The notes beneath the pieces are model-generated. The model worked only from the letters and a program-made list of their open reading frames with translations. It made no database searches and was not told where the DNA came from. From contig OX597828.1 of NCBI GenBank assembly GCA_951406725.2, forward strand, positions 9,548,001 to 9,612,000: a DNA stretch of 64,000 nt, given 5' to 3'. A program made the translations under genes and the position numbers. This DNA is from Octopus vulgaris (Eukaryota). Position 1 is the stretch's first letter. Each line of letters opens with the position of its first letter. Positions 19,770 through 34,862 of the stretch are shown here, in pieces.

Positions 19770-20150
19770 GGAATGCCATAGAACATTCCGGGGAGCATTT
19801 GCTACCTTCTTAAATTCATGGTGCTCTCACATTCCTGAGAATACAACACATAGAATCTTGCCTTGGCATGTCTTTGGATCATATCAACAGGATGGGGAGG
19901 ATCCTTGAGCTGCTGTGCAAGCCTCCTTCAAACAATAGTTTGAGGTTGTGCAATCGCTGGCAAAGTAAATTCCCGACACGCCGTGGAGTTAGTGGGCGCC
20001 GCGCTGACAGTGGGGCTGCGGGCGCAAACCCGAGGGAAGTCGAACACGTGTGCAATAAAATTATGCATGGGCATTGCTGGCATACTGCATGGACAATGGT
20101 TAGTGATGGGCTTTCTCAGTTGCGAGTAGACACACATCATCATTGTAAGT
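19770..20150 (+). mobile_element. GC-rich island, possibly a Mutator-like (MULE) transposase relic
   Basis: One frame reads [32 protein letters not shown], resembling the MULE CxWH region, followed by stops. Weak. Confidence 0.25.
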
Positions 20151-20231: not shown

Positions 20232-20284
<53 letters not shown>

Positions 20285-20297
<13 letters not shown>

Positions 20298-20944
20298 TTA
20301 GAATTTTCTCTGACTTCTCAGATTTTTGTATGCTGGACTACTGGTTTTAAATTGATATTAAAATTAATATTAATTTATCTCCCTCATTATTTAAATATTG
20401 AAATAAATACGTTCTCTAGTAGTAAGCACCAACCGCAGTGAATTATTTACTGCAGCCCTTCGCCTCAGGAATTTATTAGCGCGCCAGAGCCAAGATATTT
20501 GAAATTTTATCACTAGTGTAATCGGTAAAACTATACACGTGTATGTACTGGCACGGAAAGCTGGGATAATTTTTTTTTTCAATTTACATTACAATGAACG
20601 AATGCACTGAAGAAGCACGGAAATTTGAATTGCGTAAGTAATTCTTTTGTTAAAGGCCGAAACCGAGGTATGCATTTAATTCTGTTTTTTATATAAATTT
20701 TCATCTGTCCTGCCCGCTAAATTTGGTTCTGGTGTTCGCTGTATTTTTCCTCTAGAGAATTTCCTTGTAGTTTGATCGTTGATGGTCTATTTCTAGCATA
20801 CGGCCGACTCCCTAGCAGTAAGCCCTGCCAATATATACATATATCAGAATTTTCTCTGACTCCTCAGATTTTTGTATGCTGGACTACTGGTTTTAAATTG
20901 ATATTAAAATTAATATTAATTTATCTCCCTCATTATTTAAATAT
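20285..20944 (+). mobile_element. Hammerhead-bearing retroelement unit (solo Penelope pLTR or retrozyme) bounded by 114-bp direct repeats
   Basis: Direct repeats at 20285-20398 and 20831-20944 (2 mismatches); STNRSELFTAALRLRNLL at ~20425-20480 resembles a PLE ORF C-terminus; hammerhead at 20601-20676. Confidence 0.65.
20601..20676 (+). ncRNA. Type I hammerhead ribozyme
   Basis: Stem I AATGCA(20601-06)/TGCATT(20671-76); CTGAAGA 20607-13; long stem II containing GAATTGC-GTAA-GTAATTC; GAAA 20659-62; short stem III ACC-GA-GGT; GTA cleavage triplet, cut after 20670. The base of stem II has one mismatch. Confidence 0.8.
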
Positions 20945-21214
20945 ATATAAATATATATATATCAATATTAATAATACGGTGATTGTTTCTTGTCAGGAAC
21001 AAAAGGATTAATAGGACTGCTATAGAAGTGCTCTATTGAAAGAGACAAAAATATCAAACTCGTGAAGCGTTCCATATTTTTGGGATAAGTAAATATGGTT
21101 CCCTTCTTAACTATAAGGCTTCTTTTACCTGAATAATAATTTATTTAATAATATTTCTAAACGATGAACTTTTATTTTATTTATATGATATATATTATAT
21201 ATTTTTTATATGCT

Positions 21215-32819: not shown

Positions 32820-34862
32820 GTTTCATAATTGATCGTTGATTTCGTGTAGAGTTCATCTTCTCATACAGACAGATATTGTTTTGTTTTTTACGACCTGACA
32901 AGAAGTGAAAGCGCCAGTTCAATCACTGTATATATATGTATATATATATATATATAATCCCCCGCCACAAAAGAAACGAAGAACAAAAGAAGAAAAAATA
33001 AATAACGCAGGGACTTGGTACTTGCAAAGTATTAGCAGATGCTCGGGGAAGCAAAGAAAGGTATATTTATGTTTCGAGCGAAGCTCTTCTTCAGAAGCAG
33101 AAGACAGAGAAAAGTCCAAGAAAACGGGAAGATGGATGGGAAAAATCACCAACGATCCACATGTAGTTACACCCCCCCACACACACACATATATATATTT
33201 ATGTGCATATATATGTGCCGAAATGATTCGATAAAAAAAATTTTTCAAGAGGTGACTTGTAGTGAAACGCATAAAAGCAAGTTAGATGCACAGTACATTT
33301 ATGCTGGACAAAATATGTATTATTTCATACAATAAAATATTTACATAGTCGACATGTTTCGCTCGTTAGGGATGATATTACAATTTCATGCTATCTTGAG
33401 ATGTGTTCATTCCATTTTAGTCGGAAGAAGGATATTTTTGAATGAAACAGGAAGCAAATAAATTTTAGGGGAAGTAATCAGTGATTCTTATAATTAGAAG
33501 GAAGGGAGGTAATTACTTACTATGAAGGTGAATTGATAAGACGGATATTATTTTTCAATAAACGTAGTGTCTATTCAACCGTTATTCTACATAAGATGTT
33601 TCACTGAATTGGTAAGGAGTTGAAATTTTGACCTTAGCTGGGGAATCTGCACATATCTCTGTATGAATTCGCTGAAACGTATCTGCCTATATCTTTGGAA
33701 ACGGAATGTTTACTCATGGAGCATTCTCTGTCTGAAAGATATTCTTCCTTAACCTATATAGATATGTTCACATCATGAACAAATTATGGCGTAGATTAAT
33801 GTTTGCGGACAGTCGGTCTAACTTTTGAATATGAATTCCGGAATCCTTTTCTCATATAAGATGCAGTGAACTTATAGATGAGCTCTAAGGTGTGACATAG
33901 GAACTCAACCATAAGTTCAATGTAAATTTTAGCAGAAACAGCTGTGAGGTAATGAAGTTCATTAAATGATTGTGTATTCTTTTGACATTCTTATTTTTAT
34001 AAATATATGTAAATGTGTGTGTGTTTGCGCGTGGCTGGGTGTGGATACATATAAATATATATATACTCATATAGGTATACATGCATATGGTATGTATATA
34101 TATATATATATGTGCGTGTGTGTATATATACTTGTATATATGTACATATGTAAATACTTACATACACACATATATATATATACACATACTTATATATATT
34201 TATTTGTTTGTGTGTGTACATATAAATATATACATTTACTCAATACACATATATATATACGCATATATATACACACACACGCACACACACATATATATAT
34301 ATATACATACACACACACATATATATATATAGATAGATAGAGAGAGAGATTTGTGTGTATATGTGTGTGTGTGAAGGTGTAAGTTCATGCATACATATGC
34401 ACGTGAGTCTGTAGGTACATACACACATAAATACATATACATACATTTCATTAATATATTTTTTGTGCTAATTACTGCGTGGAATATTTTTGTTAAAAAA
34501 TAACGGCCGATGTCATGGACGTTTCTTCTATGTTATCATAACGTTTTGTTACAAACTATACGAAAAGAATTTGAAAAAAAAAGCCAAACCGAAGAATGAA
34601 ATGTAGAGCACGGTTTAGAGTTACTTAATTTAATGTCTTCCAGTAATTTGAAACTGGAAAGTTTGACAAGTTTACTGTAAAGGACAAAATATAATTTAGA
34701 GCATGATATCAGCTTACACTTCAAAAAATATTCCCGATTAAGAGATTGACTGAAGCCAAAAATAACAAATAATATATTCTATTTAAATTTTCTTTCACTC
34801 CTTTTTTTTTTTTGCAATGAGTCTGAAATATAATTTTTCAAAGACACATTCTTCCAATAGAA

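What the first reader, a model, noticed from the sequence alone, without database searches (positions are those of the whole stretch)
20285..20944. Near-intact hammerhead ribozyme in a 546-bp-period, 1.2-mer unit: candidate cephalopod retrozyme or circRNA element
Seen: a full type I topology at 20601-20676. It has 6-bp stem I AATGCA/TGCATT, CTGAAGA, a 45-nt stem II capped by GAATTGC-GTAA-GTAATTC (GNRA loop), GAAA, mini stem III ACC-GA-GGT and a GTA cleavage site. The only blemish is an A.C (or C.C) mismatch at the base of stem II. It lies between 114-bp direct repeats that are 98% identical, inside (TA)n-rich DNA. There is no RT, only a short PLE-like C-terminal relic (NRSELF). Established: PLE pLTRs and non-autonomous retrozymes carry hammerheads with short stem III that cleave as dimers, and retrozymes yield circular RNAs in several animals. 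Inference: either a greater-than-unit-length copy of a ~546-nt circular RNA, or a solo pLTR with an unusually long target duplication. The low repeat divergence suggests a young insertion.
Basis: partly seen in the sequence, partly recalled or inferred. Interest (0 to 1): 0.8.

Follow-up and report, generated by a model that had tools for sequence, protein, structure and literature searches.

The report
Hammerhead-bearing Penelope-dependent repeat copy
The region is one decayed, 1.2-unit copy of a 546-bp non-coding mobile repeat that carries an unusual hammerhead-ribozyme motif and was pasted into a (TA)n microsatellite in the manner of Penelope-like retrotransposons: a new example of a known kind ("animal retrozyme"), not a new kind of element.

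Summary
Window 20601-20676 (+) has every hammerhead (HHR) core nucleotide in type I order, and 114-bp direct repeats (2 mismatches) lie 546 bp apart inside (TA)n. The 114 bp are not a target duplication. They belong to a dispersed family (at least 1,448 candidate places; 255 exact HHR-pattern copies). Family copies share a 3' end (...TTTAAATAT+(TA)n), have variable 5' ends, form 1.0- to 4-unit tandems, and often carry a head-to-head inverted 5'-truncated partner. This is the Penelope-like element (PLE) insertion signature. An intact 781-aa RT+GIY-YIG PLE in the same genome inserts into (TA)n in the same way and is the candidate helper. No significant sequence similarity links it to the family. 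Rfam does not recognise the motif. Three points support a real, dimer-acting HHR at family level. Among five subfamily consensuses, 12 of 13 changes are structure-compatible and none is in the core. Stem II folds identically in all families. Two copies cofold, unconstrained, into the double-hammerhead. The window copy has one HHR and a private stem-II-breaking mutation, so it is a dead copy, not a circRNA source. Cleavage, circular RNA and the host taxon were not testable. The "NRSELF" PLE relic is not supported.

The parts
20235..20284 (.). (TA)n microsatellite, 5' flank (target DNA)
   Evidence: Almost all family copies abut (TA)n.
20285..20398 (+). 5' partial unit (pLTR-like terminal redundancy): unit positions 533-546 plus 1-100. 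The exact 5' junction cannot be resolved, because the unit's own ATATATACATATAT merges with the target (TA)n.
   Evidence: Identical to 20831-20944 except for 2 of 114 positions.
20399..20830 (+). Single-copy remainder of the 546-bp unit. Non-coding.
   Evidence: Matches end to end at 91-96% in at least 40 places of the genome. No ORF, and no similarity to the PLE protein.
20601..20676 (+). Hammerhead-like motif, type I. Stem I 20601-06/20671-76; core CUGAAGA 20607-13; stem II 20614-58; GAAA 20659-62; stem III 20662-69; predicted cleavage between A20670 and U20671.
20614..20614 (+). A after A9. It faces C20658 (A.C) in this subfamily and in family C, and pairs with U in subfamily B. It corresponds to the 'extra nucleotide between 9 and 10.1' typical of PLE hammerheads, but here a base opposes it 5' of G12.
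   Evidence: PMC4209133.
20622..20622 (+). Private C>A substitution of this copy. It breaks the C-G pair of the GACA/UGUU middle helix of stem II.
20831..20944 (+). 3' terminal segment of the copy. It ends ...CCCTCATTATTTAAATAT, the 3' end shared by the family.
20945..20968 (.). TA-rich 3' flank (target DNA)

Best explanation
Window 20285-20944 is an inactive genomic copy (1.2 units) of a 546-nt non-coding, non-autonomous retroelement family. The family behaves like an animal 'non-LTR retrozyme', that is, a PLE-dependent element.

Proposed life cycle:
1. Source arrays with two or more units are transcribed (inferred).
2. The hammerheads of neighbouring units pair through their short, nearly palindromic stem III into a double hammerhead. 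Each cuts after GUA (window equivalent 20670/20671), releasing 546-nt RNAs. As in other retrozymes, a tRNA ligase may circularise these RNAs (inferred).
3. A PLE reverse transcriptase/GIY-YIG endonuclease supplied in trans nicks a (TA)n microsatellite. The candidate is the intact 781-aa PLE of this genome.
4. cDNA synthesis starts at a fixed internal site of a longer-than-unit template: UUUAAAUAU at unit position about 100, less often AUAUAUACAUAUAU at position 546.
5. Synthesis runs for one to four units and stops at a variable point. Sometimes an inverted 5'-truncated twin is also laid down.

Shown here: the insertion footprints and the structural conservation. Inferred: the helper's identity, self-cleavage and circularisation.

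The window copy has one HHR and a broken stem II, so it is a dead end.
For: Family and architecture:
- At least 1,448 candidate places on all large contigs.
- In 30 loci, copies end at unit position about 100, or at 546 in 5 of 30. They start at scattered positions and often carry a head-to-head inverted 5'-truncated partner.
- The 3' junction ...TTTAAATAT+(TA)n recurs in nearly every terminal copy.
- A sister family (85% identical to the unit, 97-98% among its own copies) forms tandems of 2 to 4 units.
- The three units of one array are 100% identical to each other but 2-3% from other arrays, so arrays arise in one event.

Helper candidate:
- 456-bp pLTRs that are 99.3% identical; inserted in (TA)n; ends ...ACAAATAT+(TA)n.
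- (TA)n targeting, pLTRs and inverted 5'-truncated copies are described PLE hallmarks (PMC8557442).
- Internal initiation of reverse transcription is reported for a PLE (PMC11167929).

Hammerhead:
- The core is intact in all 36 sampled copies, and 255 places match the exact pattern against 0 in the reversed control.
- The stem II of the A, B and C consensuses each folds freely into the same three-tier hairpin with a closed base.
- 13 differences separate the five subfamily consensuses. None lies in the core and 12 are structure-compatible. Simulation gives P = 0.0008-0.009.
- 96% of cells are paired, against 27-38% in slid registers.
- Unconstrained cofolding of two copies gives the double hammerhead as the minimum free energy (MFE) fold, with a gain of about 6 kcal/mol.
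- PLE hammerheads of this genome also have 54-59-nt stem II.
- A retrozyme HHR with a mismatch at the stem II base still cleaves (axolotl HHR_Amex2, PMC7229834).
Against: - No Rfam hammerhead model reports the motif, even on 86 nt at E<=10. A canonical long-stem-II HHR of the same genome reaches 19.6 bits.
- All families have A, not G, after A9, with an opposing C or U 5' of G12. That arrangement is not described for PLE hammerheads, which keep G10.1-C11.1 directly next to the core.
- There is no two-sided covariation. All stem changes are wobble transitions.
- As a monomer the HHR fold lies about 2 kcal/mol above the MFE, and the window motif is no more stable than shuffles (z = -0.7).
- 5' ends do not clearly pile up at the predicted cleavage site: 12 places against 4-6 in a control window, and about half are explained by TA microhomology.
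- The unit shows no significant similarity to any of 33 PLE loci, including at the 3' terminus.
- No RNA data were available.
Confidence: 0.7

Rival explanations
1. The 1.2-unit copy, and the 2-4-unit arrays, are rolling-circle cDNAs made on a covalently closed 546-nt circular RNA.
For: - Units within one array are 100% identical.
- There are two alternative 3' ends, both at the TA-richest spots of the unit, as expected if priming can occur anywhere on an endless template.
- CircRNA intermediates are documented for other animal retrozymes (PMC7229834).
Against: - The autonomous 4.8-kb PLE has no CTGANGA in its 3'UTR/pLTR, yet has the same greater-than-unit redundancy.
- Internal initiation on linear templates is reported for PLE RT.
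- Linear multimeric transcripts of existing arrays would give the same products.
- No RNA evidence is available.
Confidence: 0.3
2. The hammerhead-like motif is catalytically dead. It is either a decayed relic of a PLE pLTR ribozyme or a conserved three-way-junction/hairpin kept for another reason, such as protein binding or RNA stability. The family spreads without self-cleavage.
For: - Rfam finds nothing.
- The stem II base is non-canonical in every family.
- Core conservation alone is not significant at 12% divergence.
- There are no two-sided compensatory changes.
- PLE hammerheads generally cleave poorly in vitro (PMC4209133).
- PLE families without hammerheads proliferate well (PMC8557442).
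Against: - Every core nucleotide is kept in three families, while 13 changes accumulated around them, 12 of them compatible with the fold.
- The unconstrained dimer MFE is exactly the double hammerhead.
- A described active retrozyme HHR tolerates a mismatch at this position.
Confidence: 0.35
3. A solo pseudo-LTR of an autonomous PLE, flanked by a 114-bp target-site duplication of host DNA.
For: Only the local picture: two direct repeats around a hammerhead-bearing segment.
Against: - The 114 bp are part of the repeat family at dozens of unlinked loci, always in register with the unit.
- No ORF-bearing relative of the unit was found among 33 PLE loci.
Confidence: 0.02
4. An ordinary satellite or local tandem duplication made by replication slippage or unequal exchange. 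The hammerhead resemblance is chance.
For: TA-rich, slippage-prone surroundings.
Against: - Dispersed on all chromosome-scale contigs, with a constant 3' end and variable 5' ends.
- Inverted 5'-truncated partners and a (TA)n target.
- The motif is absent from 100 shuffles and conserved across subfamilies.
Confidence: 0.03

Closest known systems
Animal non-LTR retrozymes (Cervera & de la Peña 2020, PMC7229834; Li, Clavereau & Pollet 2026 preprint, 10.64898/2026.07.22.740005)
   Same: - Short non-coding AT-rich units, each with a type I hammerhead.
- Occur as monomers, dimers and short multimers.
- No LTR, PBS or PPT.
- Proposed dependence on PLEs.
- The 546-bp unit length lies inside the reported range of 51-972 bp.
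- Hammerheads with a short stem III act as dimers. One described family has a mismatch at the stem II base.
   Different: - The hammerhead is not recognised by Rfam and has an extra A.C/A-U pair between the core and the G-C pair.
- Stem II is 45 nt.
- Copies are mostly 1.0-1.6 units rather than long arrays.
- Strict (TA)n insertion with a fixed 3' end is documented here.
- Expression and circles are untested.
- No report for cephalopods was found in the held library.
Minimal/atypical hammerheads of Penelope-like element pLTRs (Cervera & de la Peña 2014, PMC4209133)
   Same: - An extra nucleotide after A9.
- A longer-than-usual helix II.
- A 2-3-bp helix III with a small loop that can extend into a dimeric helix III.
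- Location in a terminally redundant (pLTR-like) retroelement.
   Different: - Here the extra A is opposed by a C or U on the 3' strand.
- The loop of helix III (GA) is not palindromic; it gives tandem G.A in the dimer.
- The element has no RT/EN ORF.
EN+ Penelope-like elements that target (TA)n (Neptune/Naiad-type; Craig et al. 2021, PMC8557442)
   Same: - Insertion into (TA)n.
- Partial tandems (pLTRs).
- Adjacent inverted 5'-truncated copies.
- In this genome a 781-aa RT+GIY-YIG PLE with a CX4CXXC linker shows the same junction type...AAATAT+(TA)n.
   Different: The 546-bp family encodes nothing and shares no significant sequence with that PLE. That PLE shows no CTGANGA core in its 3'UTR/pLTR.

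Membership tests
Hammerhead ribozyme, type I (Rfam RF00163 and the classical consensus) | Score at or above the Rfam gathering threshold | tested here: not met
   No hit at gathering score or at E<=10 on 501 nt and 86 nt. Families B and C are also negative. Control: the canonical-core HHR in L045 scores 19.6 bits, still below the 34-bit threshold.
Hammerhead ribozyme, type I (Rfam RF00163 and the classical consensus) | Conserved core C3 U4 G5 A6 N7 G8 A9 / G12 A13 A14 / A15.1-U16.1 / H17, in type I order with three helices | tested here: met
   Sequence; descriptor scan; intact in all 36 sampled copies and in 255 exact-pattern places.
Hammerhead ribozyme, type I (Rfam RF00163 and the classical consensus) | G10.1-C11.1 pair directly adjoining the core | tested here: not met
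   A follows A9 in all families. It faces C (A.C) in families A and C and U in family B. The G-C pair comes one step further in.
Hammerhead ribozyme, type I (Rfam RF00163 and the classical consensus) | Helices supported by covariation | tested here: inconclusive
   96.4% of cells are paired, against 27-38% in slid registers. There are 5 one-sided wobble changes and no two-sided change. An indel-coupled new U-A pair appears in family C. 12 of 13 changes are compatible, P = 0.0008-0.009.
Hammerhead ribozyme, type I (Rfam RF00163 and the classical consensus) | Site-specific self-cleavage after H17 | not testable with these tools
   Needs in vitro transcription of monomer and dimer. The genomic proxy (5' ends at the site) was inconclusive: 12 places against 4-6.
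Animal non-LTR retrozyme | [quoted passage not shown] | tested here: met
   Met at family level: arrays of 2-4 units of 546 bp, each with the motif. The window copy itself has only 1.2 units and one motif.
Animal non-LTR retrozyme | Non-coding; no LTR/PBS/PPT; non-autonomous | tested here: met
   No ORF, and no similarity to the PLE protein. PBS and PPT were not searched for specifically.
Animal non-LTR retrozyme | Expressed as linear and circular unit-length RNAs | not testable with these tools
   No transcriptome was available.
Penelope-like element (autonomous) | ORF with a telomerase-like RT and a GIY-YIG endonuclease | tested here: not met
   None in 20285-20944. The 'NRSELF' frame has no similarity.
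Penelope-like element (insertion signature only) | Partial tandem (pLTR), adjacent inverted 5'-truncated copy, fixed 3' end, AT-rich/(TA)n target | tested here: met
   The same features appear in the intact PLE of this genome. The window copy shows the partial tandem and the (TA)n target, but not the inverted partner.

The most novel reading that the evidence does not exclude
The family is a live retrozyme lineage of a 2.8-Gb (probably cephalopod) genome. Its hammerhead works despite an extra A.C/A-U pair wedged between the catalytic core and G10.1-C11.1. Its copies carry an unambiguous PLE footprint: (TA)n target, internal initiation site, inverted twins. It would then be a natural system in which the retrozyme-PLE helper relationship, and the tolerance of the hammerhead core to this insertion, can be tested directly.
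Probability: 0.4. Interest if true: 0.5.

Novelty: new member of a known kind. Interest (0 to 1): 0.38.

Why it matters
Animal retrozymes have been proposed to be non-autonomous passengers of Penelope-like elements. That proposal rests mainly on co-occurrence and on pLTR similarity in vertebrates. Here the link shows up as insertion footprints. The hammerhead-bearing 546-bp family and an intact RT+GIY-YIG PLE of the same genome both land in (TA)n. Both end in ...AAATAT at the junction. Both show partial tandems with variable 5' ends. That makes the helper relationship testable in one organism.

The motif is also a hammerhead variant that curated models miss. This suggests that such elements are under-counted in AT-rich invertebrate genomes.

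For the window itself the practical message is modest. It is a dead repeat copy in microsatellite-rich intergenic DNA.

Tried and rejected
1. Rfam scans at gathering score and at permissive E-values, on the window, on an 86-nt cut-out and on copies of families B and C. No hammerhead hit.
2. Looking for the parent PLE.
   - 30 GIY-YIG loci plus three 8-kb PLE loci were compared with the unit by blastn (word size 7). Nothing significant.
   - The anchored 3'-terminal alignment to the PLE is no better than shuffles.
   - tblastn of the PLE protein against the element: best E = 3.9. The 'NRSELF' relic is therefore rejected.
3. Rfam on 20 PLE loci: no hammerhead at gathering score. The 781-aa PLE has no CTGANGA in its 3'UTR/pLTR.
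4. Testing whether 5' ends pile up at the predicted cleavage site.
   - A first pattern was swamped by an unrelated (TA)n-abutting repeat.
   - Cleaner patterns gave 12 places at the site against 4-6 in a control window, about half with TA microhomology. Inconclusive.
6. Identifying the host organism through an exact-protein look-up of the PLE ORF: not on record.
7. Literature search for cephalopod hammerheads or retrozymes: nothing specific.
8. Rejected readings: target-site duplication, satellite, SINE with tRNA head or poly(A) tail (none seen in the sequence), coding relic.

Full report
**1. What is in the sequence**

- Stem I: AATGCA (20601-20606) pairs with TGCATT (20671-20676).
- Core: CTGAAGA (20607-20613).
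- Stem II: 45 nt (20614-20658), ending in the hairpin GAATTGC-GTAA-GTAATTC.
- GAAA (20659-20662); stem III ACC-GA-GGT (20662-20669); A17 at 20670.
- The predicted scissile bond lies between 20670 and 20671.

One search confirms a direct repeat with 546-bp spacing. Trimmed to the part that is truly shared, it is 20285-20398 and 20831-20944: 114 nt with 2 mismatches. Both flanks are (TA)n.

A home-made descriptor, just loose enough to accept this motif, finds only this site in the window on both strands. It finds nothing in 100 dinucleotide shuffles, and a looser version expects 0.13 hits per window.

Rfam disagrees. No hammerhead model reports the site at gathering score, at E<=10 on 501 nt, or on 86 nt.

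**2. What the 546-bp unit is**

The unique part of the unit (20410-20830) matches end to end at 91-96% in at least 40 scored places, out of 1,448 first-look candidates, on all large contigs of the 2.8-Gb assembly. I mapped the unit onto 30 loci, with these results.
- Copies end at unit position about 100. In 5 of 30 they end at position 546.
- Copies begin at scattered positions and span 1.0-1.6 units.
- Many carry a head-to-head, 5'-truncated inverted partner.

Printing the 3' junctions shows ...CCCTCATTATTTAAATAT followed directly by (TA)n in nearly every terminal copy. Internal units instead continue ...AAATATTGAAATAAATACG.

The 'target-site duplication' alternative is refuted.

A sister family is 85% identical to the unit but 97-98% identical among its own copies. 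It forms tandems of 2-4 units plus the same 100-nt terminal piece. In one array the three units are 100% identical to each other while differing by 2-3% from other arrays. Arrays are therefore laid down in a single event.

The element has no ORF. The 'NRSELF' frame is a 36-codon open stretch, and its best match to the genome's intact PLE protein has E = 3.9.

**3. Who moves it**

A fixed 3' end, variable 5' ends, partial tandems, inverted 5'-truncated twins and a (TA)n target are the published structural hallmarks of endonuclease-positive Penelope-like elements (PMC8557442).

The genome holds many GIY-YIG matches. At least 15 of them sit in an open 781-aa frame. [quoted passage not shown]

The 4.8-kb element has these features.
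- 456-bp pLTRs that are 99.3% identical.
- It sits in (TA)n.
- Across several subfamilies it ends ...TTTTTTACAAATAT+(TA)n. This is the same kind of junction as the 546-bp family.

It is the best helper candidate, but only by behaviour. Neither blastn nor an anchored terminal alignment shows significant similarity to the unit.

This PLE has no CTGANGA core in its 3'UTR/pLTR, yet it has the same greater-than-unit redundancy. In addition, a PLE reverse transcriptase has been shown to start cDNA at internal sites of its template (PMC11167929). Together these explain a fixed 3' end inside a longer template. They also mean that the 1.2-unit structure does not by itself prove a circular RNA.

**4. 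Is the hammerhead real?**

*Against:*
- Rfam finds nothing, whereas a canonical-core hammerhead with a 59-nt stem II from the same genome (L045) reaches 19.6 bits when given alone.
- Every family has A after A9, facing C or U. G-C is therefore not directly next to the core.
- As a monomer the hammerhead fold lies about 2 kcal/mol above the MFE.
- The window motif is no more stable than shuffles.

*For:*
- The core is intact in all 36 sampled copies.
- An exact pattern of core, stem III and 3' stem I occurs 255 times, against 0 in the reversed control.
- The stem II of the A, B and C consensuses each folds freely into the same three-tier hairpin: a closed base, a GACA/UGUU helix, and a 7-bp hairpin with a tetraloop.
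- I aligned five subfamily consensuses. They differ at 13 events in the 76-nt motif.
  - None is in the core.
  - Five are wobble-preserving transitions in stems.
  - One turns A.C into A-U.
  - One inserted U is matched by a G>A opposite it, creating a U-A pair.
  - Five fall in loops.
  - One breaks the loop-closing pair.
- The formal count shows 96.4% of cells paired, against 27-38% in slid registers, but no two-sided covariation.
- In a simulation of 13 random substitutions, 12 or more are compatible with P = 0.0008 (60% transitions) to 0.009 (all transitions).
- Unconstrained cofolding of two copies gives the textbook double hammerhead for all three families: an intermolecular helix III of 6 Watson-Crick pairs around a tandem G.A, with a gain of about 6 kcal/mol.

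*Comparison with the literature:*
- Other PLE-linked hammerhead motifs in this genome also have 54-59-nt stem II.
- PLE hammerheads typically carry an extra nucleotide after A9, a long helix II and a tiny helix III, and cleave poorly except as dimers (PMC4209133).
- An axolotl retrozyme hammerhead with a mismatch at the stem II base still cleaves (PMC7229834).

I conclude that the motif is most likely a real, weak, dimer-dependent hammerhead maintained in the master copies (about 0.55-0.6). It is an atypical variant, and catalysis is unproven.

**5. A genomic proxy for cleavage**

Several copies begin at or within one base of the predicted 5' product: L030, and three family C copies. A genome-wide pattern that demands non-consensus bases just upstream of UGCAUUU found 12 such places. 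A control site 30 nt downstream gave 4-6. About half of the 12 join (TA)n, where the UA of GGUA offers microhomology. I treat this as inconclusive.

**6. The window copy itself**

It differs from its subfamily consensus at about 11 events in 546 nt, and its two 114-nt ends differ at 2 positions. It is a moderately young insertion.

Two of its private changes lie in stem II. One of them (C>A at 20622) breaks the middle helix, so that stem II no longer closes in the free fold.

With a single hammerhead it cannot release a unit-length RNA. It has no inverted partner. No gene lies nearby. The only PLE-like coding trace in the window is a 51-aa GIY-YIG-like relic at 33656-33805 on the minus strand.

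**7. Placement and novelty**

Functionally and structurally the family fits the animal non-LTR retrozymes. The reported range of unit lengths, 51-972 bp, includes 546 bp. Its insertion signature ties it to PLEs.

It fails the sequence-model test for Hammerhead_1 and the G10.1-C11.1 criterion. I therefore file it as 'works like a PLE/retrozyme hammerhead; atypical variant', not as a confirmed member of the Rfam family.

I found no report of such elements in cephalopods in the held library. The host taxon could not be confirmed.

Noticed in passing
L070 430-5672 (G000:C16:20834929-20840171); also L071, L072: An apparently intact 4.8-kb Penelope-like element. It has a 781-aa RT+GIY-YIG ORF with a CX4CXXC linker, an upstream 359-aa ORF, and 456-bp pLTRs that are 99.3% identical. 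It is inserted in (TA)n. The same 781-aa frame is open at 15 or more places. Its 3'UTR/pLTR has no CTGANGA core, although canonical EN+ PLEs are said to carry hammerheads.
   Followed up: partly
L045 125-214 (-) and 449-538 (+): A head-to-head inverted pair of a different hammerhead-bearing element: canonical core, 59-nt stem II, ACGAUCGU helix III. It ends ...CTTATTTTGA+(TA)n, immediately beside the 3' end of a minus-strand PLE copy. Hammerhead_1 scores 19.6 bits when the stretch is given alone.
   Followed up: partly
L032, L033, L036 (1501-1608): Rfam-positive type I hammerheads (34-36 bits) of one repeat family, with a 63-nt insertion in stem II. L031 holds a compact canonical one (45.5 bits). 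Their host elements were not examined.
   Followed up: no
Genome-wide, e.g. G000:C1:1969613-1969664: A very abundant unrelated repeat whose end TTATTCAAAGGAATTCCAACTCTGTTTTTTAT abuts (TA)n at hundreds of places. It is another (TA)n-associated element family.
   Followed up: no
window 33656-33805 (-): A 51-aa stretch 41% identical to the GIY-YIG region of the 781-aa PLE (E = 2e-4). It is a decayed PLE fragment 13 kb from the finding.
   Followed up: no
L030 1214; L073-L075; 12 places: Some copies begin at or within one base of the predicted hammerhead 5' cleavage product (UGCAUUU...), often preceded by an A. The count is 12 places against 4-6 at a control site. It may be a footprint of cleaved templates or just TA microhomology.
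   Followed up: partly
Subfamily B2 (L023, L024:1739, L029; also C3:62199712, C5:11803474): This subfamily carries G>A at the first 3'-strand base of the stem II hairpin, which breaks the loop-closing C-G pair. It is the only structure-disrupting difference among the five subfamily consensuses.
   Followed up: partly
window 19940-20030: A short GC-rich stretch (GCCGTGGAGTTAGTGGGCGCCGCGCTGACAGTGGGGCTGCGGGCGCAAACCCGAGGG) just upstream of the microsatellite, unlike its AT-rich surroundings. It was not identified.
   Followed up: no
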